Shown piece by piece: positions 3,301 to 32,000 of a stretch of 32,000 nucleotides of DNA. Under the pieces are notes generated by a model. It worked only from the letters and a program-made list of their open reading frames with translations, was not told the origin of the DNA and did no database searches. Origin of the DNA: Wallemia ichthyophaga EXF-994 (lineage: Eukaryota > Fungi > Basidiomycota); NCBI RefSeq assembly GCF_000400465.1, contig NW_008806274.1, forward strand, positions 120,244 to 152,243, given 5' to 3'. The position numbers were made by a program, and so were the translations under genes. How positions within the stretch are numbered: position 1 is the stretch's first letter; each line of letters begins with the position of its first letter.

Positions 3301-3308
3301 TGTACTAT

Positions 3309-4860: not shown

Positions 4861-4894
4861 TCTTAACGCAAGACGTTGAGCCGGCAACAAGGGC

Positions 4895-12270: not shown

Positions 12271-12990
12271 CTAACTTGCTATTTTATATACTTGTCCTGA
12301 TTGATCACTGACTGGTGCCGTTGAAAGAGTGTCTGACCAGAATTTGAGTATACCTGACCACTCTTGAGGATCCTTAGGCATTTCATCACCAGCTTTATCA
12401 CCCTCAAAGATCGTAACTTTGGAGAAAGCTTTATTGAAATTTGAGCTGTCGAGTACATTCCTCGACGGTCGAGTGAAAATGCAAATAGGAGTTGCAGTTT
12501 TAGAAGAACCCGTAGCGTAAGAGAGGAGTGGACCGAGTACATTTACCACTGAGCCCAAACTGATATTGGAAGATCTAGCAAACTCGACAGCAACAGAGCC
12601 ACCTTGAGCGAAACCAAAGAGATGGATATTCCGTGTATCCCAGCCGAATTGGCTAGTGAGTGTGTAAATCAGGTCGTTGAGTAAGTTGAGAGCAATCCGT
12701 GGATCAGGTGACTGGATAAGATTACCGAGCATATCGAAAGACTGATACCACATCCTAGCTTCATCGAAGAAAGGTACGGGGACAGGACCTTGCAAGACGA
12801 GAGACGCGGTCTGAGGAAGACGCAGCTTCTTAGATAGATTAACGAAATGAGAAATGTTGTCGCCCAATCCATGCAGGTAGATGATTAAGTTGCTATCTAC
12901 GCCGTCTGCTGAAGGGACGTACTCAAACTTGGCGTGTCTAAAGTCCCGCTGGCTTATGGCCTTCTTCGCGCCTAATTCTTCGACATTCAT
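12271..12990 (-). CDS. Phospholipase/carboxylesterase-like alpha/beta hydrolase, probably catalytically degenerate
   Basis: LIIYLHGLGDN oxyanion motif. The nucleophile elbow reads GFAQG rather than GFSQG. No His is evident in the C-terminal segment (GDEMPKDPQEW). Confidence 0.82.
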   Translation of the reverse strand: MNVEELGAKKAISQRDFRHAKFEYVPSADGVDSNLIIYLHGLGDNISHFVNLSKKLRLPQTASLVLQGPVPVPFFDEARMWYQSFDMLGNLIQSPDPRIALNLLNDLIYTLTSQFGWDTRNIHLFGFAQGGSVAVEFARSSNISLGSVVNVLGPLLSYATGSSKTATPICIFTRPSRNVLDSSNFNKAFSKVTIFEGDKAGDEMPKDPQEWSGILKFWSDTLSTAPVSDQSGQVYKIAS

Positions 12991-13171
12991 CGTTTATTAA
13001 AGATGAGAGTGTTGATAAGCGGGGCGTCTTAGCTTTGGATCCAACTGTCAAGTGGAAATATCTGCGAAAAAATGGTTTCTTTTGAGCCGCTTTTTGCGTC
13101 TGGGGTGAGTGCAGGGGAATATTGCATTCTATAATCACCTCCTCATCCACTCACAGCACCATGAAATCAAA

Positions 13172-13989
13172 ATGCCGTCAAGTCGAAACAAGAATACGAC
13201 TTTGACCGCGGATGACAAACCTTTGGGTGTGTATTGATGCTTCGGTTTATTTCAGCCACATAGGCTCATTAGCTGTTAGTTTGGGTCGATTTGGAGATGT
13301 CCGGGCTGGACATCAATCAAGACTGTATAATAGAGGCAGCCGTTATAATTACTGATGGTAATCTTAACGCGGTTGATAACGGTATATCAATCCCCGTTCA
13401 AAGATCTAAAGCTGTGATGGACAAGTAAGCGTAAAGCAGCAATACTACACACGCATTCTTACGCGTTTTTTTTCATAGTATGAACGAATGGTGTATCAGT
13501 ACACACGGATTGTCTGGTCTCACCAAGCAGGTGCTCTCCAGTCCATACTCTCCTCAAGAAGTCAGCGGCGTCTGCTACGAGTATATCAAACGCTGGATAC
13601 CGGATCCTCGGGTGGCTGTTATAGCAGGCAACACTGTGCATATGGATTTACGTTTCTTAGGTTCGTTGGGTTTGTTGGTGACTCTAAATGTTTAATCTCC
13701 ATTTACACCGCAGAAATGGACGCACACAAAGAAGGATGGTCACAGATTGCTTCACATCTTGGTTACAGAGTGGTCGATGTCTCTTCATTTAAGGAAATTG
13801 CCAGACGGTGGTATCCTAATCTACCACTCAAATCGAAGCAGGCGTCTACACACCGGTGAGTGGGAACATGCAAAGGCGATCAGGGCCATTGCTGATTATG
13901 GTATAATATACAGCGCTCTCGATGACATCAGGGCTAGTATTGATGAATTGAAGTACTACAAGCAGTCAATGTTCAAGCCAACAAAATAA
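13172..13989 (+). CDS. REX2: Oligoribonuclease (DEDDh 3'-5' exonuclease, Orn/Rex2)
   Basis: Five exons; introns include 13227-13279 and 13425-13478. Spliced motifs: DKPL|VWVDLEMSGLD, MNEWCISTHGLSGL, AGNTVHMD, HLGYRVVDVSSFKEIARRWYP, H|RALDDIRASIDELKYY. Confidence 0.93.
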
Positions 13990-14065
13990 ACTAACAAGAT
14001 AAATGTAATATTATTATATCCGTATCCTTAGCCCCACTCACCTCCTTTAACACCAACATCCACCA

Positions 14066-14858
14066 ATGGCTGATCAGCAGACGCATAAGATTTACTACTT
14101 GGGAGCATTTGACAGCTCGAATAAGCCTGCAATAAATATACAGCAATGTGAGGATCTCGGCAGCTTCAGCTTCTATCAGCGCAGCTCCGTTAGGGAGTTC
14201 TTGGTCTTCATGGCTAAGACTGTGGCAGAGAGAACCGAAAATGGACAGAGGCAATCAGTGCAGGAGAACAACTACACAGCGCACGTATTCAGACAGGGGG
14301 ATTATTCAGGTGGGTTGAGTGGACTGTGTTACGTGGTTAGCTCACTTTTTTATAGCTGTGGCTATTGTAACGGAGCAGTATCCAGTCAGGCCAGCGTGTG
14401 TACCCTAATTACGCGTCACAACCACTCTAAAACACACACAGCTTCTCCCTTCTGCAAAAAATACTTGACGCAGTCCCTGGCGCGGTCAGAACTGCACCAA
14501 CATACCCTGAGTGGGTCGAAGGAGCGAGAAAGGGGAATAACCCCACACAATGTCCAGTAGTATTGCCTGAGCTCAATACCCTCATCATAAAGTACCAAGA
14601 TCCCAAGCAAGCAGACACCATCATGAGAGTACAGCAAGAGTTGGATGAGACAAAGGTCGTAATGCACAAGACAATCGAAAGCGTCTTGGAGAGAGGTGAG
14701 AAGCTGGACAATCTCGTCGAGCGTTCAAATGCTCTATCTGCACAATCTAAGATGTTTTACAAGACTGCAAAAAAGCAAAATAGCTGTGGGTGTGGATTGT
14801 TTTGCTATGATCCATCTAAACGCTTGACAAACACTATACAGGCTGCGTTATTTCTTAA
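14066..14858 (+). CDS. YKT6: Longin R-SNARE Ykt6
   Basis: DLGSFSFYQRSSVREF (longin domain) and KYQDPKQADTIMRVQQELDETK...LERGEKLDNLVERS (R-SNARE). The last intron, 14786-14841 (GTGGGT..TACAG), creates the terminal NSCCVIS* di-cysteine prenylation motif. Confidence 0.95.
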
Positions 14859-14926
14859 TCCATCTTGCTCGGATACCTCGTCTTTGTTCGTAATAATACA
14901 CATTATCATACATATGTACACCCATT

Positions 14927-15598
14927 TCACCTTGATGTGCCCCGTATACTGGCTGGATTGGGTGAATGAGTCGTTGAATGAGCAGGAACAGTCAGCGCTC
15001 GATCGTCAATACGCGTCTTCTTCTCTCCATTCGCGACACCGTTGATACCATCGTCCTCATCTTCGCGTCTCCTCTTCTTTTTCTTCTTCTTGCGTCTTTC
15101 ATCGTCGTCGTCGCGTCCGGTGAAGACGGAGGCGTCAAACTGAGTTGAGTTAGTCGTGCTCATTCCACGAAGTACATTGATCGCCCAACTTACATTGGGT
15201 ATACTTCCAGGCGGGAGTCTTCCAAACGCCTCGACCAACGTGGCATTATCAATACTATCAGCAGTGATAGTTGGTGGCTGGAACTCTGGATCGAACAGCA
15301 GATCGCGAATTTTAGGCAGCGAGCTATCCTTCTTGCTGATTGTGTTACGTCCAGGAAGATCATTTACAAATAGCTTGAACGTTGACTCCATTTTGTTTCT
15401 CCTAGCCTCACCGTTATCCTGAGGAATTTGAGTGCTACTGCCAGTTGCGTTGGCTGCAGTTGGCTTTATGTATGGCTTTACGTATGTGTCGTAAGTCTCA
15501 TCGAGCCCGAACAACGTTAGCAGATCCTGATTGCCGTTGATTGTACCATTCGGAACCTCACTGGGATCTTCAATTGGATAATAATTCGGTATTTCCAT
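14927..15598 (-). CDS. MED19: Mediator subunit Med19 (Rox3)
   Basis: GNQDLLTLFGLDETYDTYVKP, FKLFVNDLPGR and a Lys-rich KKKKKKRRRE tail. Probable in-frame 54-nt intron 15193-15140 (GTAAGT..CTAAC..CTCAG). Confidence 0.75.
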   Translation of the reverse strand: MEIPNYYPIEDPSEVPNGTINGNQDLLTLFGLDETYDTYVKPYIKPTAANATGSSTQIPQDNGEARRNKMESTFKLFVNDLPGRNTISKKDSSLPKIRDLLFDPEFQPPTITADSIDNATLVEAFGRLPPGSIPNVSWAINVLRGMSTTNSTQFDASVFTGRDDDDERRKKKKKKRRREDEDDGINGVANGEKKTRIDDRALTVPAHSTTHSPNPASIRGTSR

Positions 15599-15643
15599 TT
15601 GCGATGGTTGTTATGGTTGCGATGTTGGTTGACTACTTCAACG

Positions 15644-16248
15644 ATGAACTGTGAGCGCTATGAGGTGACTGTAGGGAAATCAGCTAAAATCTTATAAATA
15701 GTCATTCCCAATGGGCCTGGATTGCTGCCAAAGTGGATGCTATTCGTTTCTGTGCTCGCCATATTCAACAGCATACAGAATTGCTTAACTACTTCACTCA
15801 CAGCTCGCGTATACAATCACAAGCCACAATTAGGTGTGTTTCTATTGGCAATTTGCCCTCTCTCACAGCCACTCCTCAGTAAATCCCCTTCAAGCACGAA
15901 CGTTTGGCGTGTGGACCTTCACTTCAGCTGTCGTTAGATTCTACGCTGCGCACAACATTAATAATAAAGTGTGAGCGGGAATGTTTGTAGGTGAATTCCA
16001 TCATTCTCACATCTCATCCCTTTAGCGTCTACGAAATCGCTATCTGGACATACGCTATCGTCATTGCGCACTATATATCCGAACTTCTCTACTACAGAAC
16101 ATCGAAGCTAAGCGCAGGAATCATTAGTCCACTTGTTATCGGTAGTAAGTTCGGATTCCTTGCCCTGTTCCCCACCATCCTAACAGCCATATTAGCTGCT
16201 TCTTTCGTGTGGATGATATCACAATACGATTTCTACGTCAAGATTTGA
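15644..16248 (+). CDS. ERG28: Ergosterol biosynthesis scaffold Erg28
   Basis: Micro-exon ATGAACT 15644-15650 and intron 15651-15701 give MNFIPNGPGLLPKWMLFVSVLAIFNSIQ. Later exons give NPLQARTFGVWTFTSAVVRFYAA and HYISELLYYRT. Four introns in total. Confidence 0.92.
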
Positions 16249-16313
16249 AATCTAATCTGTTTTATTATATACTCTTAATAATCTTTATCTATTGAAATCA
16301 ATGTACATTCTTT

Positions 16314-19300
16314 TCACTTGAACGCAAAGAAATCGGATGCTGCTACGGGTGAACTATGCTTCGGAAGCTGTACTGCGCGTTGTCGACCACTGCTTCCATC
16401 GTTTTTATGGCGTGGGTGACGAATATGCCCTTCTGAGTCTCTCGAACCGGGTGAGAATTCATCAATTGGTTGCTCATCCCTTGTTGCTGTCTTGCTTGGC
16501 GTACCCGAAGGCGTCGATTTAGCTACAGCCTTTTCATCTCTCCGCTTCCGTATAGCTTCAGCACTCGGTATGTCAACCAGCGAAAGTGGTTCGTCTCGCG
16601 CAAATTGATACCTTTCACTTCCATCTTTTATCACACTCGCTTTAGATGGTTTGCGTGTTTTCAGGGCTGCAGCTAGCTTTGATCTGCGTGCATCTTGTGA
16701 GAGTGTTCTTTCAACAACATCTTTGTCTGGTGGTGGAATGCTCTTTGCACTAACGCTTTTCTCAAATGATAATGCACTTGGCTTGCTACCGTTACCGCCC
16801 ATACCGCCGTTGTTGATTGAAAGCTTTTCAGCACGCTTAATCAAATCATCCAAATTAATCCTCTTCTCAGCTATAGCTATCGCCATTGTACGTGTTGTCC
16901 GGTTTATACTGTCAATTGAAGGAACTTTGAATGTCTTTCCACCTGTCTTCGATTGCATCATCTTGGCCTTGAGTGAGCTGAGTTGATCCTCTACACTCAT
17001 TATACCATCATTCAGCGCTTGCATAGATTTCCGAAGCTTTTGCTGATTCTCACTGTGCTCTGGTCCTAACTGCCTCACTTTCACTATACGAGCAAATTCT
17101 GGATCATTCCTTGCCCTTATGAATCGTGAAATCTCTTCTTTCTTAGTTTCAGCTGTGTGATAATGCGTTAGATAGTTATCAAGTTTAGCATATCCCTAAC
17201 TCACCCTTTAACAAAAGACTCTGTAACTCAACAACTTTGCGCTTCTGTGACAATGACGAATCCTTCAATTCTATCGTATCAGCCTCCAAATCCACACTGA
17301 GCTTCTTAATCAACTCAATGTCACCCAATGACCATTGAGATTTGTCATAGAGAGCCATTACATCATATTCATCAACTGATTGACGCTTCTTTGTGATTTT
17401 ATCGTGGAAATCTAGACAGCTCTTGATATTAACATTCATCTGTTAAACGTAAGCTAGGCGACCTCCACCAAACAGACAACTTACACTCTCGATCTCCTTC
17501 TCAACCATTAGGTACATCTTCAAGAACTCCATAGCCATGCCAGAGGTACCCTCTAATTGACTTGCAGACAACTCCTCATCCATTAGCTTCAACTTAGGAG
17601 GTTGATGTGGTGTTTGTATTGAGTATGATTCATTGTCATTATGCACCTTCTTGAAAGGCGCCGAGACTGGCACAGGAGAAGCAATTGGCGCCTGTTTAGA
17701 GAATGCATCCGAGAAGGCCCCATTATTGAAGCTGAAACTACCACTTGATGATTGAGCTGGAGTTTCCGTACTTGGATTGAAACCAGCGAAAGTAGGACTT
17801 TGAGGTGCGCTAAATAAATTTGGTTTAACAACTTCTGTTGCTGGCGCTTGCTGACCGAAACCAAACTTAGTCTTCTAGGTTTTGTCAAAAGAGCAAAGTT
17901 GGTACAAAATTACTTACGTCTTTTTGCGGAGAGGTTATTGATGCCTTACCGTAGACTGGTGGAGACGAAGCCAGCGGTGAGCTCTCACGCGGTTTAAATG
18001 GTAAACCGAAAGGTGACTGTTGACCAGCCTTGCCGAATGCACCGCTCTTAAAGCTGAGTGCAGATGCTGCCGACGTTTTTTCAGGTGAGCCTGGAGGTGT
18101 GGTAGATTCGTCGTCTTCCACTTCCCTCTGCTCTTCAACACCTTCTTTCTGCTCTTCATGACCCTCTTTCTGCTCTTCGACTTCAACACCCTCTTCCTCT
18201 TCCGCCTCATCAACACCCTCTTCTTCGTCAACAGTGTTGCTGACATGCTCATACCCTTCACTATCACCGCTTTCTTCTTCTTCTTCCTCCTCCTCATCGC
18301 CATCATCTTCTCCTTCCTCATCTTCAGCGTTATCCTGATCAAATTGAACTACCGGCGGATGTTCTTGTGACACTCTCCTACTTGGAGACTCAGATGCAAA
18401 GCCAAAGAAACTCTTCGTTCTGTCATCTTCTTCTTTAGCATCGCTTATTTGTTTCTGATAAAATTGTGAGATTAGAGATGAATAACAACTCTCAAACCAA
18501 CCTTATCCTGGGATTTTGCAATGTTTCCACCAATTGAGAAGCTACTCGACGAACTAAAGGCGGATGGTTTACTGCTTTCAGGGGTTTTTGAAGCATCTCC
18601 ACCAAACCCAAATGCACCTGTAGGGTTTGGTGATTCATTATTAGTTCCTGCGAATGAGAAAGCACTCGCTGGTTTGCTATCTTCAGATGGCTTGGCAAAT
18701 GCTGAGAAAGCATTTTTTGGTGCTTCATTCTTTTTATCATCTTTAACGGGAGATCCGAATGCATTGGCATGAGCACTAGTACTGGCACCACCAAAGCTGA
18801 AAGCAGATGGTGCTTTCCCCAAATTATCCTTCTTCTCGTTTTTAGCAGGCGAAGTAAAGGCATTAGCACCTCCAAAGCTAAACTGGGACGGTGCCTTCAG
18901 TGGATCATCTTTCTTCTCGTCAGTTGCAGTTGATTCTTCTGGCTTGACACCTCCAAAGCTAAAACCACCAGTCGTTGGAGCTGCTTTAGGGGGCTGAGAA
19001 GCGGTCCCAAAAGCACTTGCACCACCGAAGCTAAATGCTGATGGTGCTTTGACCGTATCATCCCTCTTCTCATCCGTTTTTGGCGCATGTGAAGAAGAGC
19101 CTGACGAACCAAATGAGCCTCCTCCGAATGAGAACCCGGCACCCCCTGGGGCTGCAGGTGGAGCTGCTGGCATTGATGACGCTTTGCTATTTTCGCCCGA
19201 TTCCTTTAAAGTGTTGTCGCATACACCACACTTGGTCGCATCAGCTGGTTGATCGAGCATACATACGCCACACTGTTGCTTGCTTTCTTGAGACTTTGCG

Positions 19301-22300
19301 AACATTTGAGCAAGGGGGCTTGGCTCGCTAGTCTTCTCTTGCGTTGGCGCGCTTGACAGCGCAGGTTTTGGTGCCTCAGAATCAGGGTTCTTGAATGCAG
19401 TTGCGCATACCGTGCACTTATCAGCATCTTTGGACGACTTTAATGAGCAACTTGAACATATTTGCTGATCGTTGGACTGTGTACGTGCTGTAGCGAAGAT
19501 GCTTGGCATTTCTTGCTTGTCTTCTTTTTCGTTCTTGCTACTCTCATCTTGCTGATTTTGCTTTGCTTTAGCTTCATCCTCAGCGTCTGCCTTACGCTTG
19601 TCTTCTTCCTCAGCCTTTTTACTGGTTTCCTCTCCCTCTTTCTTTTGAGCAGCGGCGGCCGCGGCGGTAGCAGTCTCCTCTTCTTTCTTTCTCTCGTTTT
19701 CCGCTTCAACAGCCTTCTTGCAATTTTCTTCTTCCTCTCCTTTTTTAACTTTCTCCTCTTTCTCCTTCTCTTCCTTTTTTTCCCTTTCTTGTTGTTGCTT
19801 TTGAGCTTTTTCTTTTTCAGCATTAGCAGCAGCTTCCTGCTCAGCTTTGGCAATCTGTAGCTTTTCGCGCTCTTCCTCGCCTCTGTCTTTCTCCTTGACA
19901 TAAGCGAACGTGTCATCAACGTTATCACCCTCTTCCGATTCAGCTTCTTCGTGTGTCTTGGCATTACCCTCCTTCAAGCAGCCAACATCGAGTTGGGTAC
20001 CGCTACCAAAATCAGCGAGAAGATCATCAACCTGACCATCTTTCTTCTTATCTTTCTGAGACATCTCAGCAGACGTATTGCGCAAACCGAACGTATTAGA
20101 AGCACCTCCGAAACCGAACCCTGCACCTGCACCTGCACCTGTATCGTTAGATGGCTTGGTTGGTGAGCTTCCACTGATTGCTTTGAGGCGAGTTAGATTA
20201 CATCTCTAAAGTCTATGTACCACTCACAGAATGCATTGCTCGTCGGCTGCAATGGAGTTTTACTTTCACTTCCGCTTTCTCCTCTCTCTCTCTTCACGTC
20301 AGCCTTAGGTGTAGTGCTGCCGAAAGCACTCTGACCAAATGCACTTGGCTTTCCGAATGCACTCGATTCAGTCTTACTCTTGACATTGTCTGAGAACGCA
20401 CCAAATGCACTGCCTCCCTCTTTCTTCTCACCGAACAAACTCGGTTTAGCTGCAAATGCACCAAAGCCTCCCCCGCCACTGGGCGTTGTAGCCGGTGAGC
20501 TCTCACTGCCACCTTGGTCCTCTTTTTTAGGCGTACCGAATGCCGATGACTGTCCAAACGCAGATGAAGATGGCGGCTTGGATGCGAAAGCGCCAAAGCC
20601 GCCACCACTAGATGGTGCAGTTGCAGATGCTAAAGCAGAAGTAGATGAGCCCTCCTTCTCCTTCCTGGGTGTACCGAATGCTGATGTCTGACCGAATGCC
20701 GAGGGTTGTCCAAAAGCAGTAGATGTTGACGGCTGAGATGCGAACGCACCAAATGCTCCACCGCTAGTTGGTGTGCTGGTTTGGGGGCTTTCTTTATCTG
20801 GCTTTGGTGCACCGAATGCTGAGGTCTGGCCAAATGCCGAAGTCTGACCGAATGCACTGGGCTGGCCAAACGTACTAGCAGATCCACCGAATGCACCAGG
20901 TTTGGCAGAGAAAGCCCCAAATCCGCCACTAGCAACACTTGATTCGGCTGGTTTGTCATCCTTATTTGCAGATCCAAAGGCAGTAGGTTTGTTTGAAAAT
21001 GCACCAAATCCACCTCCGCTTTGACTGAAGCCACTTGGCTGACCGAAAGCACTAGGTGTGCTTTGTCCAAACGTGCTGTTTTGTCCAAATGCACTGCCTG
21101 TTGTTGGTGCAGTCGAAGGACTCGACGAGAAGGCATTCGCAGGAGCCGGAGCCGGAGCCGGAGCTGGATTTGAAAAGGCAGATGGTTTTTGCTGCGGCTC
21201 ACTCTGCATAGGTGCAGCTTCAATCGATTCTTCTTGCGGATCATTGGGCCATCCTTTCAGATACTGATATGGTCCATACGAGTTTATTAACCACCACGCA
21301 AACAGTTTACCTTCAGAGTTGAGCGTCCATAGAGCAGGAGCAGGAGGGCCATCAGGTGTGTCTGCAGCAGAGCCAGGCTCTGGTTTTAATGGATCTTTCG
21401 CACCCAAGTCAAGCTCCAGCCCGACTGGATATGTCTCTTCTTGCTCCTCCGACATTGGCAGTGCTGGTCTAGCAGTTTCTGGAAGAGCGGCAGCGGCAGC
21501 AGCTATCTCATCGTCTCCAAACACTTCTTTGGCGTGTGGGGAGGACGTGTCTGGTGTGACTATACAGCCTATATCCGAAGAAGGACCTGATGCAGCAAAT
21601 AGTATGTTCCTGAATGGCGACCAATCCCTCAACCAGCTGAAATAGCGGTATGGGAGACGCGACATAACGCCGAAAGGCGGTGCTGGATCAATAGCTTCGA
21701 TGTAGTTGCCATTGTGGATGAAACATGTCTTGTCTTCGAGCGTGTAAGCATCCTGATCGCTATCTCGGCCCTCACTGGAAGCCTCTTTACTGAGTGAAAA
21801 TGTGATAAGGAAGAGATTGTTCTCGAGCCATTTGAGTGAGTTTGGTACGTGATTGGGGGTGAGCTCGAATGAAGAAGGGGGAGGAGGTATCGACATTTTG
21901 ACTTGATTGGAGGTAGTTACTGTGATGATTTCGTTTGTATTTAACGCTAAAGCTAGTTGCTTCCCTTTGGCTGACCAGCTTGCAGCAAAAGTGGTTTTGT
22001 TGAGGCATTGCGTGTTTTTTGACATTTCATCGTGCAAGTAAATGCAGCCGTCAGCTGTGAGAATGGTAATATATTGTCCTACTGGATTTGGGAGTATTGA
22101 GGTTGGATGAGAAGGCAAGTCGATGGAGTTGGTGAGTGTGGCATCGACGTACAAGTGCAACGACTTATCGCTGGCGACTATGAGTTGATTGGAGTGGTAC
22201 TTGATGTGCTGAGATTGCGTGTTGATCGTGTGTATCGGTGCTTGTGGTGAGAGAAGCTGATGAGACTGAGATTGCGACAGTTGAGAGCGCAGGCCGGATA

Positions 22301-22520
22301 AGGAATAAACGTGGACGCCGCTGTTTGTGGCCACAGCCAGCCTATCCAGCTCGTTGCTCAACGTGAAGAGATTCGCTGCGTCGTTGATCTTCTCTCCAAG
22401 GGTGTAAGAGATGTAAGATGAATTTGAGAATGGACGCGTAGTCAAGCACTGCGTGGGTAATTAGATAACGTATCTCTGGGGTAATTACAGTATTCTCACT
22501 TCAATCTCTATTTCGTCCAT
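16314..22520 (-). CDS. NUP159: Cytoplasmic-face FG nucleoporin Nup159/Nup214, about 1970 aa, with two internal RanBP2-type zinc fingers
   Basis: Exons 22520-22500, 22448-20228, 20180-18502, 18454-17918, 17874-17485, 17439-17205, 17152-16314; all junctions keep the frame. N-terminal beta-propeller-like region (ASWSAKGKQLAL, WLENNLF, DPAPPFG), SAFG/PAFG repeats, FSFG repeats, and C-terminal coiled coil AETKKEEISRFIRARNDPEFARIVKVRQLGPEHSENQQKLRK. Confidence 0.9.
18787..19068 (-). repeat. Three copies of a 16-aa K(K/R)D(D/N)xxKAPS(A/Q)FSFGG unit in Nup159
   Basis: KRDDTVKAPSAFSFGG, KKDDPLKAPSQFSFGG and KKDNLGKAPSAFSFGG, read directly from ORF 18472-20085. Confidence 0.85.
19219..19272 (-). other. 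C4 zinc finger 2 (RanBP2/NZF-type spacing) inside Nup159
   Basis: CGVC-MLDQPADATK-CGVC, i.e. C-x2-C-x10-C-x2-C. Confidence 0.78.
19405..19458 (-). other. C4 zinc finger 1 (RanBP2/NZF-type spacing) inside Nup159
   Basis: CSSC-SLKSSKDADK-CTVC, i.e. C-x2-C-x10-C-x2-C. Confidence 0.75.
20330..21110 (-). repeat. SAFG/GGFGAF FG-repeat array of Nup159
   Basis: Recurring (S/T)AFGQ(P/T/S)SAFG and GGFGAF(S/A) units. On the + strand, ccgaatgc and ccaaatgc recur. Confidence 0.85.
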
Positions 22521-22667
22521 CGTTGTCAGTGATCAACAAGCCATTTGTGATTTAGCGCTGAGCAGATAAACGAATTCTACAGCGCGTGGTGATTGATCTG
22601 GTTGGTATTCAAAAATTAATCAAACCCCAATTTGCTTTGATTTGTTTGCTTGATTTCTCACTATCTC

Positions 22668-23234
22668 ATGTTCAAACACATTGATTCAGCGTGTACAGCT
22701 GTAAGTTTATCAGAGTTTGAGCATCTCGCTAGCAGAACTCCTGGTAGCTTTTCTGATCTTCCAACGGTGCTCAGGCTCCGCGTAGATGAATGCTCTTTAA
22801 GTGGTGATTCAGAGCTAGATAACAACCTCAAATACACCGTTTTTATCACTGATAAAGAGCTCGTTGTCTTCTCGCAGTCAGTCTCTACGGGCATCAGCTT
22901 GGATTACCCTTCTATCATGCTTCACGCCGTCAGCGCATCAACTAACTCTATCTTCCTGCAAATTGACGAACGTACAGAAAACATAGACGACTTTGAGAGT
23001 AAGGATATTCACATACATCCTCAGAACCCTTCAATTCTTCATGAAATATACGAAAAACTCAGTTTCTGCGCTAGTTTGCACCAGAACAAGTTTCCATCTG
23101 AGGAGGACGATGACGGCGATGCTATGATAGACGATGGCGTTGGGCTCTCAGACCAGGGCGCTGCCAATTTGGCCAGATTCGACGATATGCTAGACAACCA
23201 AGACAAACACACTGACAAAAAGCAGAAGCAATAA
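22668..23234 (+). CDS. pICln/Lot5 (Voldacs domain; snRNP Sm-assembly chaperone)
   Basis: ATG at 22668. ELVVFS...TGISLDYPSIMLHAVS, IFLQID, LHEIYEKLSFCASLH, then an acidic tail; typical of CLNS1A/Lot5. Confidence 0.8.
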   Translation: MFKHIDSACTAVSLSEFEHLASRTPGSFSDLPTVLRLRVDECSLSGDSELDNNLKYTVFITDKELVVFSQSVSTGISLDYPSIMLHAVSASTNSIFLQIDERTENIDDFESKDIHIHPQNPSILHEIYEKLSFCASLHQNKFPSEEDDDGDAMIDDGVGLSDQGAANLARFDDMLDNQDKHTDKKQKQ

Positions 23235-23235
23235 G

Positions 23236-23930
23236 TTAATTGTCCATGACTGTAACTCTAATACAATCTAAATATCCATTGTTATCGGGTGTTACGCGTT
23301 TTGCCAGCCAATGTTCAAGCCATCGACCAAATGCCTCTCCTCTGCTATCTGCACCCCACATCTGCTGTGTGTGGATGGAAACGCCGCCAAAGGAGTTACC
23401 CATGTACACGTCAGTGAGTAATCTATCTCCTACAAATGCAACATTCTTCAAATCACCAAACTTATTCTCCAACGGGGCTCTGAGCTTTGAAGATGGCTTA
23501 GGATGATTGTGCTCGACGACATGGACTCCTGTATTCCGCGACAAAACCTTTGCCTATAATTTTTTAGCGCTGAGAGGAACTAACAAGCCAATCGCACCTG
23601 AATAAGTCCGGGATCTTTGCCTGTGCCGGCTGAGTTAGACAAAATGACGCAGCCATCACTCCCAAAGGCTTCCTTGCACTCAATCCAGCTATTTTGCAGC
23701 TCAGAAACGACGTAATCCTGCCTCGGAAGCGTCAAGCAGTTGTCCCTGTCAATTACGATGCCAGTGATACCTTTACGTTTCAGTGCACTGAAGTCGATCG
23801 AGCGGATGTCTGGGGGTGATGAGCGGGGGGATCAATGAGCAAAATACCTACCCTTCACGCTCATTGAAGGTTTTAGCAGCTTGGGATTGAACGCTGAACG
23901 CAATGTAGCTGCTATCGCTGCAACACTCAT
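23236..23930 (-). CDS. GEP4: Mitochondrial phosphatidylglycerophosphatase Gep4 (HAD superfamily)
   Basis: Exons 23930 (or 23933)-23852, 23809-23598, 23553-23236; introns of 42 and 44 nt. MSVAAIAATLRSAFNPKLLKPSMSVK|DIRSIDF, HAD motif I DRDNCLT, motif II ILSNSAGT, motif III KP, motif IV VGDRLLTD. Confidence 0.92.
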
Positions 23931-23931
23931 C

Positions 23932-24659
23932 ATGGAACAACTTCAACAGTCGCTGGAAACTACAGGCTCTATATCGCTCCCACAGAAAGTCGCTCTGCTA
24001 TCCCACCTCAAGGCTTTAAACAGAGACAGCTCTTCTGTTATACGCCAATCTAAGCAGGCTGCTGCACATCAGGCTCAATTATCAGACGGTGTACACGCTC
24101 AAGTGCAGAATCTATTATACGAAAGGAGGCATTTAGAGCAGGAAATTGAAAGGTGCAGGAATTTCGAGACTAGCTTCGATAAAGTACCTTTGGTTTCACT
24201 TGACGAGTATCGCAAGTTGAATGGGGGCAAGGAGGAAGACGAGCACGTTTTAATGCTCAATAGACTGAAATTCGAGCTGAGAACTCGCCAGGAACTCAAC
24301 GATCACCGCAATCAGCTGCAAGAAGTGCGATCGTCAATCAACAGCGAGAACAATCAGACGAAAAACAGTTTGGAGGATCTTGACAGCGATTTGGATAAGT
24401 TTGTCGATGTGGGTGGGAGTATTCATGCGTTTACAATTGCTGAGATGCTCTATAGTTTGCAAAGGGTATCCAATCCAAGCTTAACAAGCTCGATAAGGTT
24501 TGGGACAAGGAGAGTGAGGAGGAAAGTGAGGAGAGGAAAGAGTCCAAGAATGAACTCAAGGACGATAATGACATTGAGATTGATCAAGCTAACGAGGCTG
24601 ATAATCACAGACCTCAAGATACCAACTCCGGTGAAGATCAACGTATGGATACTAATTGA
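23932..24659 (+). CDS. THOC5: THO complex subunit 5 (FmiP/Thoc5 domain), about 226 aa
   Basis: Exons 23932-24408 and 24456-24659; intron of 47 nt (GTGGGT..TATAG). LKALNR...QVQNLLYERRHLEQEIERCRNF...EHVLMLNRLKFELRTR is the Thoc5 signature. Confidence 0.85.
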
Positions 24660-24669
24660 CCTTGATAAC

Positions 24670-25131
24670 TTATTTACTATCACTACTATGCATATACTGT
24701 TCAACTGCACCTTCCAGTTCACTCACTGCCTCGCTTCTCTCTTGGCTCAATTCATCAGCTCTTCTTGAGGAGACGTTGAGGCGATGGTGATCATCACCGA
24801 GCAAATTGATCATTTTAAGCGCGTGCGTTATATCCAGTAAGCTATTGGCAGAGCGAATCATAGATTCTGATCTGCAGCTGATCTGGAATGCCTCCTTGCT
24901 GATCTTGTAGTTGTCCTTCTGGTTAATTTCCGCGAGGCCTATAATCTCCGACAGTCCATCGCTCAGCTGCCCAACTTCACCATCGACCTTGTTGTTCAAG
25001 CTCTCCTCGAACGCCTCCAAGTATTCCTCCGGAGAACGATCGTCGATTTCTGCTGATTTTGTCGATGAGTTGTTGTTGATAAGCGAGGAGCTCAACGATT
25101 GATATTTCTTAGCGTCTGATTTAACTTCCAT
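24670..25131 (-). CDS. MED22: Mediator subunit Med22 (Srb6)
   Basis: Intronless 153-aa ORF with EAFQISCRSESMIRSANSLLDITHALKMINLLGD, which matches the Med22 motif. Confidence 0.82.
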   Translation of the reverse strand: MEVKSDAKKYQSLSSSLINNNSSTKSAEIDDRSPEEYLEAFEESLNNKVDGEVGQLSDGLSEIIGLAEINQKDNYKISKEAFQISCRSESMIRSANSLLDITHALKMINLLGDDHHRLNVSSRRADELSQERSEAVSELEGAVEQYMHSSDSK

Positions 25132-28890: not shown

Positions 28891-29220
28891 ATGGTGAGGG
28901 GATTATGATATTTCGCGCACACACTTACAGTATATAGACATACGAATGCGAGATCTGCCAGGGCAAGTTTAGCAGGCCTGAGAACTTGTTGCGGCACAAG
29001 AGAAACTCACACAGGTCGGGCGACTTGCATCCATACCTGTGTTCGTGTGGGAGGAGCTATACACGCTCAGATATCCTCCTCAGACATCAGCGCGGTTGCG
29101 AAGTACACAACAACCAACCAGTGGGGTACAAGAAGCGTGGCAGGAAGCGTAAGGCTATTCAACAGCCAGTTTCATCAAGTGATCCCTCCTATTTAGCCGG
29201 GGTAGCGGCGTCAGCCTCGC

Positions 29221-29251
<31 letters not shown>

Positions 29252-29729
29252 GCAGCTACAGCAACAGCATCAACAACAACAACAACAGCTTCTTGCATCT
29301 GCTTATAACCAGCCACACCTTTTCAACACCGAAAATTGGCCTCCCGCCACTTCTATAGATAACGAGCCCGAATTACAATCGCACAGATACTGGCCCTATA
29401 CACTGTACCCAAATACAAGTACACCGCCGCCTGATTTCGAAGCATCGAATTTGCCACTCATTGGCAATACATACAACAATACACACATACCACAGCATGC
29501 GCCACAGCAAACACTACCACCACTAGCATCATGGAATACCTCAGTAAATCAAAGTCATATGGCCAGTTTGCACAATCAACAGCTTCAACAGACTACTCAG
29601 CAAGACAATTATTCTGGCTGGATGTGAGTAGCTGCTTGTATAGCTGCCAGGTCTGACCTGACAAAGTAAAACCCTCACAGAGACACATTAACATGCTCAC
29701 ACTTACAACAGCAGCAACATATCTACTAA
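28891..29729 (+). CDS. C2H2 zinc-finger transcription factor with polyglutamine tract
   Basis: ATG 28891-28893, then intron 28894-28937, then TYECEICQGKFSRPENLLRHKRNSH (C2H2) and YLCSCGRSYTRSDILLRHQRGC (C2HC). Q-rich region follows. Probable last intron 29624-29680 (GTGAGT..CACAG) gives ...GWI|DTLTCSHLQQQQHIY*; unspliced, the ORF stops at 29627. Confidence 0.85.
29220..29288 (+). repeat. (CAA)10 microsatellite within a Q12-L-Q3-H-Q6 tract
   Basis: Pure CAA x10 at 29220-29249, then CAG CAG CTA CAG CAA CAG CAT (CAA)5 CAG. Confidence 0.95.
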
Positions 29730-29943: not shown

Positions 29944-32000
29944 TCATGCGGCTTTGGATACTTTTATAAACTCTGTAAATGCTCTCTTGAACACCTTGGG
30001 CTCGTCTGTTGAGATGTGGTTTGTAAGTTCGACTGCAATGTGGTCAGGACACCCAATTGAAGGTAAATAAATGCTTCTGAGATAGTTCAAAAGTTCATCA
30101 CCACGACTCAAGTACGCCTGTCTAAGTAGGAGTGCAATTTCACCGAGGACCTGATAGTGATTGGTTGGGTTAGATTGGTGCACCGATAAAAGCTCACTCA
30201 ACTCACAACATTAGATTGACCATCTTTCAAGTTGAATGTTGGCTTGGCAGGTACTTCAAATGCCAATTTGATGAATTGTTGGTAGATAAACTCTTCGAAA
30301 CCACTCAAAGGCATTGGAGCCGGGCTGATTTGTACGACGTTTTGGGCGGGTAAAACTTTCAGATCATTTTGCACTTGCTCAATAGTGCCGTAGCAGAAGA
30401 TAATCTTTGCGACGTTGTTGAAAGCGATTCTTTGTGTAGGTGGAGCACAATCTCGAGCAAATTGACATACAGATTCAAGAATTTGAACAAATCTCCCTCT
30501 GTTCTCATCAGAAATGAACACACCTTGAAGTCCAGCTGAAAGTATGGTACCGATAAAATTAAGGTAGCTCTTTTCCATCTCTGTTCTGTTAAGTTCATCA
30601 TCAGTACCAGATATCTGCATTGATAAGAATGAAAAGACCCTATCAATAATAGGTTGTAGAATAGAGTTAAGAATTGAAAAGACTTGTGATTTTAGCTTGT
30701 GCACTAACATATTCAAGAAAGTCAAGAAGTCACTCAACTCGTTCATTTCAAGTCTACCAAGTAAACCATTTACGAACGCAGGTACGTGATTCAAGATGGC
30801 AAAGCCAGTAGAGCTGACAATCTGGGCAAAAGTGAATCGGGAAGCATCTCTGATAACTTTATATTGAGACATCTGATCCAAGACAACAAAGATTGCTTGT
30901 GTGGATTGGACAAATGGTTCAGAGTATGGGGGTGGTGGTTGGTCTAGCGAAGATGATTGTTGTATTAATGATGGTTCAGGTAAACCTTTAGCTAGATGTC
31001 CAATAGCCAAAATGGTATGGTGTACGTTGAGAATGTTCTCAACTTGATCTGGTGAGGATTGTAGAGATTGTTGAAGAGATGCTAATAATGGCTGTATTAT
31101 TTGATTCAAATAGTTTACTTGATTTGTTGGTATGTCACTGAGTTTAGCTAGAATACATCCAATGGCTTCATAAAGGTTGAGTTGATAGTGGAATAAGCCT
31201 ATAGTGTTTACCGATTTGCTTAAAACATCTTGATAGCTATCACCTTGTTCAAGTGGCAAAACGTCGACTGATAGTACTAGTAAATCCGTGATAGATTCAA
31301 GCAACTTTGGCACAAAGTTGGCTGGAATAAATCTTCTAGCTAGCATTGTGAATCGTTGGAAGAGATAAAAGTTTCTCGCTTTCACATTGAGTGACTGGTT
31401 GTGTATACCTCTGTCACCGACAAATGCAGATAAGATTGGATCTATCAATTCTTTTCGTGCAAACAGTATATCAACGTATCTCACTATCATCTCAAAGTAC
31501 TGGAGATTGACTGCGGGGTGTGGATGATTGCTGATACCTGAGTCAACAACAGTTTGTACTAGTTGACCAAGTGGTGTGTAAGGCTTTTCGTCGTACTTGA
31601 TTTTGTAGTTGTTCGCATCCTTTTTTGCTGACTGTCTCTCATCTTCTGATACGTGCACAAACGCCTGCACCGTATTACCTGATTGAATAGCTTCAGCGAA
31701 CAGAAAAACTATATAAAGCACCAATTCCGCTTGATACCAAGGAACAGAATCCGGTCCAGAGCTGGTGCATTGAGTGAGTGTTTGGTTGATGAGAGATACG
31801 ACTGTCGAAGTCCACAGCTCTTGGTCCAGTTGACAGACAGAATCGAATGTTGATCTTAACACTCTGCGAATTTCGTACAGCTCATGACGGTCGTCGTCGA
31901 CATCCTCACCAAGACCACCGAAACCCCATTCAACATCCTCATTCCACTGCATTTTTTGCATAACAGTTGGCAACAATTGACTAAAGAATTCTCTGGTTGG
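29944..32000 (-). CDS. LOS1: Exportin-T (tRNA export receptor), 3' part; the gene continues beyond the window
   Basis: KMQWNEDVEW, ELVLYIVFLFAE, HPHPAVNLQYFEMIVRY, FVGDRGIH, NLYEAIG, LFEVPAKPTFNLKDGQSNV|VLGEIALL. Intron 30206-30151; final exon ends at stop 29944 (AFTEF). Confidence 0.92.

What the first reader, a model, noticed from the sequence alone, without database searches (positions are those of the whole stretch)
19200..19470. Nup159/Nup214 ortholog carrying two RanBP2-type zinc fingers followed by FxFG repeats (a Nup153/Nup358-like module)
Seen: frame-consistent splicing puts two C-x2-C-x10-C-x2-C fingers in one polypeptide with the Nup159 propeller, SAFG repeats and C-terminal coiled coil. 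They follow a long charged E/K helical segment and precede FSFG repeats. Established: RanBP2-type fingers occur in metazoan Nup153 and Nup358 and bind Ran; S. cerevisiae Nup159 has none and yeasts lack Nup358. The canonical Trp before C1 and Asn after C2 are replaced here (QIC/QQC; S/Q), so the fingers are divergent. Inference: a lineage-specific way of placing Ran- or ubiquitin-binding modules on the cytoplasmic face of the pore.
Basis: partly seen in the sequence, partly recalled or inferred. Interest (0 to 1): 0.75.

Follow-up and report, generated by a model that had tools for sequence, protein, structure and literature searches.

The report
Zinc fingers in a fungal Nup159
A small group of related basidiomycete fungi has two conserved, unusual zinc fingers of the Ran-binding nuclear-pore type built into its Nup159/Nup214 pore protein, a domain combination not described for higher fungi, but what the fingers bind is untested.

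Summary
On the minus strand, 16314-22520, a 7-exon gene encodes a 1965-aa Nup159/Nup214 ortholog (PF16755 propeller, E=6e-44). Two C-x2-C-x10-C-x2-C motifs lie at window 19405-19458 and 19219-19272. They sit between an E/K-rich stretch and FSFG repeats and hold 8 of the protein's 16 cysteines.

Pfam's zf-RanBP model (PF00641) misses both fingers, because the signature Trp and Asn are replaced. Other tests support homology:
- The segment finds human RanBP2/Nup358 and Nup153 fingers in the PDB (E=1e-15; best single stretch 5e-7).
- A profile of the clade's own fingers does the same.
- An alignment-guided model superposes on Ran-bound Nup153/Nup358 fingers.

Four related genomes and two independent near-identical samples keep both fingers. 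All eight Cys are invariant despite TGT/TGC changes. dN/dS is 0.07-0.10, against 0.18-0.32 for the linkers.

The fingers are absent from a 46%-identical relative and from 147 other representative orthologs, all 17 named ones basidiomycetes. Three chytrid gene models combine Nup159-type propellers with canonical fingers.

Best reading: a clade-specific, selectively maintained, divergent RanBP2/NZF-type module on the cytoplasmic filaments. It probably docks RanGDP; ubiquitin is the main rival. No ligand or transcript data exist. New variant of a known kind; moderate interest.

The parts
16314..22520 (-). Whole Nup159/Nup214-ortholog gene. Seven exons: 22520-22500, 22448-20228, 20180-18502, 18454-17918, 17850-17485, 17439-17205, 17152-16314. 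Product 1965 aa.
   Evidence: Gene model from GT..AG introns of 45-67 nt with consistent frames. The product is collinear with P0002 and P0008 at both ends. The same architecture is seen in L002, L009 and L011.
21303..22376 (-). N-terminal beta-propeller (aa 32-389)
   Evidence: PF16755 Beta-prop_NUP159_NUP214, E=6.3e-44, 151 bits against a cut-off of 29.6. 362 homologs at E<=0.001.
19978..21197 (-). First FG-repeat block, SAFG/GAFG type (aa 425-815). Intron 2 lies inside it.
   Evidence: About 27 FG, of which 13 are SAFG and 0 FSFG.
20181..20227 (-). Intron 2 (GTGAGT...AAG, 47 nt). It joins the propeller/SAFG exon to the finger exon.
   Evidence: The same position is spliced in L001 and L009 (CAG acceptor) and in L002 (AAG acceptor). 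The peptide across the junction is conserved.
19498..19890 (-). E/K-rich charged segment (aa 845-975)
   Evidence: 50% E+K. Present in L001, L002, L006 and L009. The finger-less relative L004 has only a short K/E stretch here.
19387..19509 (-). Finger 1 with its N-terminal extension (aa 972-1012): MPSIFATARTQSNDQQICSSCSLKSSKDADKCTVCATAFKN. The C4 core is 19405-19458.
   Evidence: Aligns to human NUP358 ZnF1, HCNSCSLKNASTAKKCVSC. Conserved in L002, L006, L009 and L011.
19201..19320 (-). Finger 2 with its N-terminal extension (aa 1035-1074): SPLAQMFAKSQESKQQCGVCMLDQPADATKCGVCDNTLKE. The C4 core is 19219-19272.
   Evidence: Matches single NUP358 and NUP153 finger chains at E 0.009-0.1. The model superposes on them at 0.7-1.5 A. 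The core CxxC[MT]LDQPxDATKC is conserved in relatives.
18371..19170 (-). Second FG-repeat block, FSFG type (aa 1085-1335). Intron 3 (18455-18501) lies inside it.
   Evidence: 11 FG, of which 5 are FSFG. Intron.
18026..18262 (-). Acidic D/E-rich segment (aa 1372-1450)
   Evidence: Composition.
16815..17598 (-). C-terminal helical (coiled-coil) anchoring region (aa 1571-1799), spread over exons 5-7
   Evidence: blastp gives 40-44% identity to the C-terminal regions of P0002, P0008 and P0004, E 1e-48 to 1e-54. Relatives are 46-99% identical.

Best explanation
The gene at 16314-22520 (minus strand) encodes the Nup159/Nup214 cytoplasmic-filament nucleoporin of an AT-rich basidiomycete.

Domain order: Dbp5-type beta-propeller, SAFG repeats, an E/K-rich spacer, two C4 zinc fingers, FSFG repeats, an acidic stretch, and the C-terminal helical region that anchors orthologs in the Nup82 complex.

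The two fingers are divergent homologs of the RanBP2/NZF-type fingers of metazoan Nup153 and Nup358. They keep the C-x2-C-x10-C-x2-C spacing, the A-x-K-C-x-x-C-[DE] half, and a Phe-containing extension upstream. A clade-wide Gln replaces the signature Trp, and Ser or Gln replaces the Asn.

They are present and under strong purifying selection in a small clade of related genomes. They are absent from other Basidiomycota sampled.

Shown here: gene architecture, homology of the fingers, clade restriction and selection.

Inferred:
- Each finger binds one zinc ion.
- The fingers hang in the disordered FG region at the cytoplasmic face and dock a soluble partner there.
- The most likely partner is Ran in its GDP form (about 45%). 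This would create a local Ran reservoir, as the Nup358 fingers do in animals.
- Ubiquitin or a ubiquitin-like protein is the main alternative (about 25%).
For: Gene and architecture:
- PF16755 propeller, E=6.3e-44.
- Seven frame-consistent exons.
- Collinear blastp matches of the propeller and the C-terminal region to annotated Microbotryomycetes, Rhodotorula and Melanopsichium orthologs.
- The same exon order on single contigs in L002, L009 and L011.
- Intron 2 position and the junction peptide are conserved.

Finger homology:
- phmmer of the 119-aa segment against the PDB puts human RanBP2 first (E=9.8e-16; best stretch i-E 4.7e-7). It then lists single-finger chains of RanBP2 and Nup153 (E 0.009-0.12), with YAF2, RYBP and a few weaker unrelated proteins (eL40, FtsZ, a tRNA ligase) interspersed.
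- A profile built only from the clade's 8 fingers hits 7mnt_B at 5.7e-5 and 7mns_B at 8.1e-5. All 26 hits are RanBP2/NZF fingers or eL40.
- hhalign against the chytrid canonical fingers gives probability 79%, E=1.5e-5.
- PF00641 is the Pfam family that most clade fingers touch: 5 of 8, best E 8.9e-4.
- The AF2 model of finger 2 has pLDDT 81-89 in the core. Its top 12 Foldseek hits are NUP358 and NUP153 fingers bound to RanGDP, probability 0.97-1.00; the core-only superpositions (24-29 columns) give rmsd 0.7-1.5 A.

Selection:
- All 8 Cys are invariant in 4 taxa, with TGT/TGC changes in 5 of 8 columns.
- dN/dS is 0.07-0.10 in the finger cores and 0.18-0.32 in the linkers, with synonymous sites near saturation.

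Restriction:
- None of 147 non-chytrid representative orthologs has any C4 cluster. All 17 that carried an organism name are basidiomycetes.
- The 46%-identical relative L004 has 1 Cys in its 1274-aa central ORF.

Ran as the ligand:
- The closest solved relatives are Ran-binding fingers.
- A hydrophobic M-L pair sits where they carry L-V (alignments).
- An upstream Phe or Leu about 10 residues before C1 (QMFAK against human GMFTK) matches the extension that docks into a Ran pocket in all NUP358/NUP153 finger-Ran structures (bioRxiv 10.1101/2021.10.26.465790).
Against: - PF00641 does not match the window's own fingers even at E<=10.
- The Trp and Asn that define the family signature are absent from all 8 clade fingers.
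- Finger 1 (C-S-S-C-S-L-K-S) is most like NUP358 ZnF1, the one human finger that did not bind Ran. Against a chytrid-only profile it scores no better than Cys-fixed shuffles (315 of 3000).
- Val is invariant at C3+2, where Ran-binding fingers have Ala. YAF2, a ubiquitin-binding NZF by prior knowledge, has Met there.
- The AF2 model was guided by an alignment dominated by canonical chytrid fingers. The single-sequence model was meaningless (pLDDT 56, all helices).
- There is no transcript, zinc or binding data.
Confidence: 0.6

Rival explanations
1. The fingers are ubiquitin-binding (or ubiquitin-like-binding) NZF-type modules. They would tether ubiquitylated or SUMOylated cargo or pore components at the cytoplasmic filaments, rather than Ran.
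For: The positions that give NZF fingers their ubiquitin contact (T-F after C2 and a hydrophobic residue at C3+2; prior knowledge from Npl4 and TAB2 studies) read [S/T/M]-L and an invariant Val in all 8 clade fingers. Ran-binding fingers have L-V and Ala there (alignments). The clade profile hits YAF2 (1.2e-4) and RYBP (3e-4) about as well as the single RanBP2 fingers. It also hits HOIP NZF (0.03) and TRABID (0.2). Finger 1's best single-chain match is YAF2.
Against: Leu replaces the Phe of the T-F pair, and no NZF with T-L is known to me to bind ubiquitin. The best overall sequence and fold matches are the nucleoporin Ran-binding fingers. The conserved upstream Phe/Leu extension is a feature described for Ran binding.
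Confidence: 0.25
2. The motifs are generic C4 zinc ribbons that merely share Cys spacing with RanBP2 fingers by convergence. They would serve a structural or other protein-protein role unrelated to Ran or ubiquitin.
For: No PF00641 match for the window's fingers. Trp and Asn are missing. Much of the PDB alignment score comes from the eight Cys. eL40 zinc ribbons also appear among the weak hits. Finger 1 is not better than Cys-fixed shuffles against the chytrid profile.
Against: Non-Cys matches are specific: ADATKC against ASATKC, CSLK against CSLK, and QMFAK against GMFTK/DMFAK upstream. Finger 2 beats Cys-fixed shuffles (25 of 3000). hhalign gives E=1.5e-5. 24 of the 26 PDB hits of the clade profile are RanBP2/NZF fingers. 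The setting is an FG nucleoporin, as for Nup153 and Nup358, and chytrid Nup159-like models carry canonical fingers.
Confidence: 0.1
3. There are two genes rather than one. The first would be a propeller-plus-SAFG protein ending at the in-frame stop just after 20228. The second would be a separate finger/FSFG/coiled-coil nucleoporin starting inside the next exon.
For: No transcript evidence is available. Intron 2 uses an unusual AAG acceptor in the window. A nearby CAG acceptor paired with the same donor would shift the frame into a stop after 66 codons.
Against: Only 47 nt separate the two reading frames. Annotated orthologs carry the propeller and the C-terminal region in one protein. The donor, the intron position and the peptide across the junction (AFS-F/I-...SSP) are conserved in four relatives, two of them with a canonical CAG acceptor. 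A propeller without the C-terminal anchor would not stay at the pore (prior knowledge of Nup159).
Confidence: 0.04

Closest known systems
Metazoan Nup358/RanBP2 zinc-finger domain (eight fingers) and Nup153 zinc-finger domain (four fingers)
   Same: C-x2-C-x10-C-x2-C spacing. An A-x-K-C-x-x-C-[DEQ] second half. A hydrophobic pair after C2. A Phe/Leu-containing extension about 10 residues upstream. Tandem fingers about 60 residues apart, embedded next to FxFG repeats in a nucleoporin. These are the best sequence and fold matches.
   Different: Trp at C1-2 is Gln. Asn at C2+4 is Ser or Gln. Ala at C3+2 is Val. There are only two fingers. The host protein is Nup159/Nup214, not Nup358 or Nup153, and has no RanBD, SUMO-ligase or cyclophilin domains. 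Pfam's threshold is not reached.
S. cerevisiae Nup159 / S. pombe Nup146 / human Nup214 and annotated basidiomycete orthologs (e.g. Rhodotorula toruloides 'Nup214', P0008)
   Same: N-terminal PF16755 propeller, central FG repeats and a C-terminal helical anchoring region, in the same order.
   Different: None of 147 non-chytrid representative orthologs has any C4 cluster. This protein has an added E/K-rich spacer and two fingers between its two FG blocks.
Chytrid Nup159-like gene models (Podochytrium KAJ3069210.1, Physocladia KAJ3130751.1, Siphonaria KAJ3024423.1)
   Same: Nup159-type propeller, Nup159-type C-terminal region, FG repeats and RanBP2-type fingers in one predicted protein. The Siphonaria finger pair aligns directly with the window's pair (blastp E=1.4e-4).
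   Different: The chytrid fingers are canonical (W-x-C, N present, PF00641 E down to 5e-32), number 3-6, and lack the clade's upstream P-x-I-F-A motif. The models contain 2-3 propellers and may be merged paralogs. Domain order varies.
Trypanosoma brucei NUP149 of the NUP76 (Nup82/Nup88-like) complex
   Same: A cytoplasmic-side pore protein partnered with the Nup82/88 homolog. It has few FG repeats of SxFG/FxFG type, carries C4 zinc fingers, and is heavily labelled by Ran-TurboID (PMC11825100).
   Different: It has no Nup159 propeller. [quoted passage not shown] This is a functional analogy only.
NZF ubiquitin-binding fingers (Npl4, TAB2/3, HOIP, TRABID, YAF2/RYBP)
   Same: The same small fold and Cys spacing, with a hydrophobic residue at C3+2. 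YAF2 and RYBP are among the best profile hits.
   Different: The T-F pair is [S/T/M]-L here. Trp and Asn are absent. The host is a nucleoporin.

Membership tests
Nup159/Nup214 nucleoporin | N-terminal seven-bladed propeller of the Nup159/214 type (PF16755) | tested here: met
   E=6.3e-44, 151.2 bits against a cut-off of 29.6, aa 32-389 covering profile positions 5-366 of 366.
Nup159/Nup214 nucleoporin | Central FG-repeat region | tested here: met
   About 27 FG (13 SAFG) in aa 425-815 and 11 FG (5 FSFG) in aa 1085-1335.
Nup159/Nup214 nucleoporin | C-terminal helical region homologous to that of orthologs, in the same polypeptide | tested here: met
   aa 1571-1799 are 40-44% identical to the C-terminal regions of P0002, P0008 and P0004 (E 1e-48 to 1e-54), collinear with the propeller match. 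The single polypeptide rests on predicted splicing, supported by conservation in relatives; no transcript was seen.
Nup159/Nup214 nucleoporin | Binds Dbp5/DDX19 and sits on the cytoplasmic face with Nup82/Nup88 | not testable with these tools
   Inferred from orthology only.
RanBP2-type zinc finger (Pfam PF00641, zf-RanBP / Zn_ribbon_RanBP) | Four Cys spaced C-x2-C-x10-C-x2-C | tested here: met
   Both fingers. Invariant in 4 related taxa and 2 further samples.
RanBP2-type zinc finger (Pfam PF00641, zf-RanBP / Zn_ribbon_RanBP) | Trp two residues before C1 and Asn four residues after C2 (W-x-C-x2-C-x3-N) | tested here: not met
   Gln replaces Trp, and Ser or Gln replaces Asn, in all 8 clade fingers. 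Both residues are invariant in the chytrid fingers.
RanBP2-type zinc finger (Pfam PF00641, zf-RanBP / Zn_ribbon_RanBP) | Score above Pfam's gathering threshold (27 bits) | tested here: not met
   No match for the window's fingers at E<=10. 5 of 8 clade fingers match only weakly, best E 8.9e-4. They are therefore not filed as canonical members, only as divergent homologs.
RanBP2-type zinc finger (Pfam PF00641, zf-RanBP / Zn_ribbon_RanBP) | Significant sequence similarity to solved fingers of the family | tested here: met
   RanBP2 E=9.8e-16, best stretch 4.7e-7. The clade-only profile hits 7mnt_B at 5.7e-5, 7mns_B at 8.1e-5 and YAF2 at 1.2e-4. hhalign against the chytrid fingers gives E=1.5e-5.
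RanBP2-type zinc finger (Pfam PF00641, zf-RanBP / Zn_ribbon_RanBP) | Two-hairpin zinc-ribbon fold binding one zinc ion | tested here: inconclusive
   The alignment-guided AF2 model of finger 2 (core pLDDT 81-89) superposes on Nup153 and Nup358 fingers at 0.7-1.5 A over 24-29 residues. The alignment was dominated by canonical fingers, and the single-sequence model failed. Zinc binding is not testable here.
Ran-binding subclass (Nup153/Nup358 fingers) | Hydrophobic L-V pair after C2 and Ala at C3+2, which form the Ran-contact face | tested here: inconclusive
   Finger 2 has M-L (window, L002) or T-L (L006, L009). Finger 1 has S-L, like the non-binding NUP358 ZnF1. Val stands in place of Ala at C3+2.
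Ran-binding subclass (Nup153/Nup358 fingers) | N-terminal extension with a Phe or Leu that docks into a Ran pocket | tested here: met
   QMFAK is 10 residues before C1 of finger 2 and aligns with human GMFTK/DMFAK. A P-x-[IV]-F-A motif is conserved before every clade finger, and Leu sits at -10 in L006 and L009. This is a sequence match only.
Ran-binding subclass (Nup153/Nup358 fingers) | Binds RanGDP | not testable with these tools
   Needs biochemistry or a complex prediction.
Ubiquitin-binding NZF subclass | T-F pair after C2 plus a hydrophobic residue at C3+2 | tested here: inconclusive
   [S/T/M]-L plus an invariant Val. YAF2, shown, has T-F and Met. The Phe is not present.
RNA-binding subclass (ZRANB2, FUS/EWS/TAF15, RBM5/10 fingers) | N-[FW]-x-x-R after C2, which stacks on GGU (prior knowledge) | tested here: not met
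   No aromatic residue or Arg at these positions in any clade finger. ZRANB2 is only a weak fold hit.

The most novel reading that the evidence does not exclude
Zinc fingers on the Nup214/Nup159 arm could be an ancestral fungal, or even opisthokont, way of docking Ran at the cytoplasmic face. On this reading they were kept in canonical form in chytrids, kept in a remodelled Trp-less form in this basidiomycete clade, and lost repeatedly elsewhere in Dikarya, while animals carry the same module on Nup358 and Nup153. The Trp-less, Asn-less finger would then be a new structural subtype of the RanBP2 finger that still binds Ran.
Probability: 0.15. Interest if true: 0.75.

Novelty: new variant of a known kind. 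Interest (0 to 1): 0.55.

Why it matters
Textbook accounts give Ran-binding zinc fingers only to metazoan Nup358 and Nup153, and treat the fungal cytoplasmic filaments (Nup159-Nup82-Nsp1) as lacking any Ran-docking module. That view is established knowledge; Nup358 is listed as animal-only in PMC2951903 and called vertebrate- or metazoan-specific in PMC8421043 and Bley et al..

Here the same kind of finger sits inside Nup159 in a clade of basidiomycetes, and canonical fingers sit in chytrid Nup159-like gene models. If the fingers bind Ran, pore-tethered Ran reservoirs would not be an animal invention. Domain shuffling among filament nucleoporins would have placed them on different scaffolds in different lineages, and trypanosome NUP149 offers a third, analogous case.

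The fingers also provide a natural experiment on the fold: a RanBP2-type finger that is conserved without the signature Trp and Asn.

The finding is evolutionary and descriptive, so its impact is moderate.

Tried and rejected
- The search for homologous proteins with the propeller and with the finger segment returned nothing. The word index missed P0001 even though it shares 20 five-residue words with the query. The third search, with the C-terminal region, did find the relatives.
It found no record for a neighbouring single-exon ORF, so the source organism could not be named.
- Single-sequence AF2 of the 121-aa module gave an all-helical model at pLDDT 56, which was discarded.
- A profile made only of chytrid fingers supported finger 2 beyond its Cys (25 of 3000 Cys-fixed shuffles scored as high) but not finger 1 (315 of 3000). 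Two earlier runs of that script failed on hmmsearch options.
- Contigs L001, L003, L007, L008 and L010 end before the finger region and say nothing about it.
- Six full-text literature searches found no description of zinc fingers in a fungal Nup159/Nup214. The library is incomplete, so this is weak negative evidence.
- An RNA-binding reading of the ZRANB2 type was considered and rejected, because the N-[FW]-x-x-R residues are absent.
- Decaying relic fingers were considered and rejected on dN/dS.

Full report
**1. What is in the sequence**

Reading the minus strand of 18300-20400 shows two motifs in one open frame, the 537-codon ORF 18472-20085:
- CSSCSLKSSKDADKCTVC at window 19405-19458.
- CGVCMLDQPADATKCGVC at window 19219-19272.

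An E/K-rich stretch lies upstream and FSFG repeats lie downstream.

The motif is not a chance product. The spliced protein has 16 Cys in 1965 residues, and 8 of them are in these two motifs. Composition predicts 8.6e-6 such motifs, and none arose in 5000 shuffles. No other stop-free match exists in any of the six frames of the window.

**2. Gene model**

Canonical GT..AG introns of 45-67 nt join seven exons on the minus strand: 22520-22500, 22448-20228, 20180-18502, 18454-17918, 17850-17485, 17439-17205 and 17152-16314. The result is a 5898-nt open reading frame encoding 1965 aa.

Pfam finds the Nup159/Nup214 propeller at aa 32-389 (PF16755, E=6.3e-44).

The domain map is:

| Region | aa |
|---|---|
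| Propeller | 32-389 |
| SAFG-type FG block (13 SAFG, 0 FSFG) | 425-815 |
| E/K-rich spacer (50% E+K) | 845-975 |
| Finger 1 | 989-1006 |
| Finger 2 | 1051-1068 |
| FSFG-type FG block | 1085-1335 |
| Acidic stretch | 1372-1450 |
| C-terminal helical region | 1571-1799 |

No transcripts are available, so the single-gene model rests on comparison:
- blastp aligns the propeller and the C-terminal region collinearly with annotated orthologs. These come from Microbotryomycetes sp. NB124-2 (P0002), Rhodotorula toruloides (P0008, named Nup214 in one source) and Melanopsichium (P0004).
- Only 47 nt separate the propeller/SAFG exon from the finger exon.
- The donor, the intron position and the peptide across the junction are conserved in relatives L001, L002 and L009. 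Two of these use a canonical CAG acceptor, where the window and L002 use AAG.
- Contigs L002, L009 and L011 carry propeller ORF, finger ORF and C-terminal ORFs in the same order.

**3. Are the fingers RanBP2-type?**

PF00641 does not match either finger, even at E<=10. The reason is visible in the sequence: Gln replaces the signature Trp at C1-2, and Ser or Gln replaces the Asn at C2+4.

Homology is nevertheless supported by independent tests:
- phmmer of the 119-aa two-finger segment against all PDB sequences ranks human RanBP2/Nup358 first (E=9.8e-16; best single stretch 33 bits, i-E 4.7e-7). The whole-protein value is inflated by the eight target repeats. Isolated finger chains of RanBP2 and Nup153 follow at E 0.009-0.12, with YAF2, RYBP and a few weaker unrelated proteins (eL40, FtsZ, a tRNA ligase) among them.
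- The alignments match more than the cysteines: ADATKC against ASATKC, CSSCSLKS against CNSCSLKN (NUP358 finger 1), and the upstream AQMFAKSQE against GMFTKKE/DMFAKKE.
- A profile built only from the clade's own eight fingers (alignment A2) hits single RanBP2 finger chains at 5.7e-5 and 8.1e-5, YAF2 at 1.2e-4 and RYBP at 3e-4. Of its 26 hits, 24 are RanBP2/NZF-type fingers and the last two are eL40 ribbons.
- Profile-profile comparison of A2 with twelve canonical chytrid fingers gives probability 79%, E=1.5e-5.
- PF00641 is the Pfam family touched by most clade fingers: 5 of 8, best E 8.9e-4, below threshold.
- An AF2 model of finger 2 made with an alignment has core pLDDT 81-89. Its 12 best Foldseek matches in the PDB are all NUP358 or NUP153 fingers bound to RanGDP, probability 0.97-1.00; those restricted to the 24-29-residue core give rmsd 0.7-1.5 A.

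Caveats apply. That alignment was dominated by canonical fingers, and the single-sequence model was useless. Finger 1 alone is not distinguishable from Cys-fixed shuffles against a chytrid-only profile (315 of 3000), whereas finger 2 is (25 of 3000).

My reading is that both are divergent homologs of RanBP2/NZF-type fingers. Finger 2 is clearly of the nucleoporin kind. Neither satisfies the canonical signature or Pfam's threshold.

**4. Conservation and distribution**

The third homolog search, with the C-terminal region, found unannotated relatives in public read-set assemblies at 99, 79, 63-64, 55 and 46% identity.

Both fingers are present in:
- L002 (79% relative).
- L006 and L009 (63-64% relatives).
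- L011 and L012, two independent samples that are 99.1-99.3% identical in nucleotides over the whole gene.

All eight Cys are invariant across four taxa, while their codons switch between TGT and TGC in five of the eight columns.

Nei-Gojobori estimates give dN/dS of 0.07-0.10 for the finger cores and 0.18-0.32 for the linker and tails. Synonymous sites are near saturation between the more distant pairs.

The clade consensus is P-x-[IV]-F-A ... Q-Q-x-C-x2-C-[STM]-L-x-[SQ]-P-x-D-A-x-K-C-x-V-C-[DE]. The replacements of Trp and Asn are therefore clade-wide features, not decay.

The fingers are absent elsewhere:
- The 46% relative (L004/L005, GC 58% against 39-46% in the clade) has a single Cys in its 1274-residue central ORF. 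It has only a short K/E stretch where the clade has the E/K spacer plus fingers.
- An exhaustive HMMER search with the propeller found 362 homologs, and I examined the best 150. Apart from a 170-aa fragment of a clade member (P0001, 62% identical), the closest is 34% identical.
- Of these 150, 147 have no C4 cluster at all. All 17 that carried an organism name are basidiomycetes: Pucciniomycotina, Ustilaginomycotina (including Malassezia) and Agaricomycotina.

The three exceptions are chytrid gene models from Podochytrium, Physocladia and Siphonaria. They combine 2-3 PF16755 propellers, a Nup159-type C-terminal region and FG repeats with 3-6 canonical PF00641 fingers. One is auto-named Nup153. 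These automatic models may merge neighbouring paralogs. In all three, however, the fingers are interleaved with Nup159-type domains. The Siphonaria finger pair also aligns directly with the window's pair (blastp E=1.4e-4).

**5. How it most likely works**

Shown: a cytoplasmic-filament nucleoporin ortholog carries two selectively maintained C4 fingers in its disordered FG region, about 500 residues from the anchoring helices.

Inferred: each finger folds around one zinc ion and docks a soluble protein at the cytoplasmic mouth of the pore.

I favour Ran in its GDP form (about 45%) for these reasons:
- The nearest solved relatives are Ran-binding fingers.
- In the window and L002, finger 2 has a hydrophobic M-L pair where they have L-V.
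- Each finger is preceded by a conserved Phe- or Leu-containing extension. Bley et al. report that a Phe or Leu in a roughly 10-residue N-terminal extension of every NUP358/NUP153 finger inserts into a hydrophobic pocket on Ran. QMFAK lies 10 residues before C1 of finger 2.

If so, the module would hold RanGDP near the pore after export-complex disassembly, ready for re-import. This is the role proposed for the Nup358 fingers in animals.

Against this:
- Finger 1 (S-L-K-S) resembles NUP358 finger 1, the only human finger that did not bind Ran.
- Val is invariant at C3+2, where Ran binders have Ala.
- The [S/T]-L plus Val pattern is closer to the T-F plus hydrophobic signature of ubiquitin-binding NZF fingers. 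That signature is prior knowledge; YAF2 shows T-F and Met.

Ubiquitin or a ubiquitin-like protein is therefore a serious rival (about 25%). RNA binding of the ZRANB2 kind is unlikely, because the required aromatic and Arg residues are missing.

**6. Comparison with what is known**

The parts are known: the Nup159/214 scaffold and the RanBP2/NZF finger. Two things are new. One is the combination in a dikaryan fungus. The other is the Trp-less, Asn-less finger variant.

Nup358 is listed as animal-only in Neumann et al. and described as vertebrate-specific in a 2021 review. Six full-text searches found no description of zinc fingers in a fungal Nup159/Nup214.

A functional parallel exists in trypanosomes. 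NUP149 of the NUP76 (Nup82/88-like) complex carries unrelated zinc fingers and is strongly labelled by Ran-TurboID.

**7. Origin**

The data do not decide between a gain in this clade and retention of an ancestral fungal state seen in chytrids.
- For a gain: absence from the 46% relative and from all other sampled Basidiomycota. Parsimony favours this.
- For retention: the chytrid models, and the close resemblance to metazoan nucleoporin fingers including the upstream extension. This keeps the ancestral reading alive, at about 15%.

The fingers lie in the middle of a 1679-nt exon, so there is no sign of exon shuffling.

**8. Verdict**

- It is qualified by the failed Pfam test and by the chytrid cases.
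- It is untested for ligand, zinc and transcripts.
- I class the finding as a new variant of a known kind, of moderate interest (0.55).

The source organism could not be named. By its closest orthologs it is a divergent, AT-rich (GC 45%) basidiomycete nearest to Pucciniomycotina and Ustilaginomycotina.

Noticed in passing
P0003, P0065, P0110 (chytrid proteins KAJ3069210.1, KAJ3130751.1, KAJ3024423.1): These gene models hold 2-3 Nup159-type propellers, a Nup159-type C-terminal region, FG repeats and 3-6 canonical RanBP2 fingers. One is auto-named Nup153. Each finger is followed by a KPSLF motif. They may be merged tandem paralogs.
   Followed up: partly
window 20181-20227; L002 about 3015-3060; L009 about 2290-2335: Intron 2 ends in AAG in the window and in L002, but in CAG in L001 and L009. 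In the window, a CAG 7 nt further on would shift the frame into a stop.
   Followed up: partly
window 23881-24768 (+), 30198-31976 (-): A THOC5-like ORF (PF09766, E=2.6e-27) and an exportin-T ORF (PF19282, E=1e-138) lie within 15 kb of the Nup159 gene. That makes three nuclear-export genes in one window, which is probably coincidence.
   Followed up: no
window 29221-29285, in ORF 28986-29627 (+): A CAA/CAG run encodes a poly-Q tract in an ORF that starts with a C2H2-like zinc-finger motif.
   Followed up: no
L004/L005, ORF 1749-5573: The 46%-identical, GC-rich relative has SAFG-type and FSFG-type blocks but only a short K/E stretch between them and no fingers. This marks the junction between the two FG blocks as the place where the clade's E/K spacer and fingers arose.
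   Followed up: partly
L002, L011 and window 12271-23544: Gene order around the locus is conserved between the window and its relatives: PGP phosphatase, Voldacs/ICln, Nup159, synaptobrevin/longin SNARE, Abhydrolase_2, Sec7-like.
   Followed up: no
L001 about 3530-3560 and 3960-3990: This read-set contig has frameshifts inside the FG-repeat region relative to L009 and the window. They are probably assembly errors in low-complexity sequence.
   Followed up: no
tool behaviour: The word-indexed homolog search did not return P0001, although it is 62% identical to the query and shares 20 five-residue words with it. Negative results from that tool are weak evidence.
   Followed up: yes
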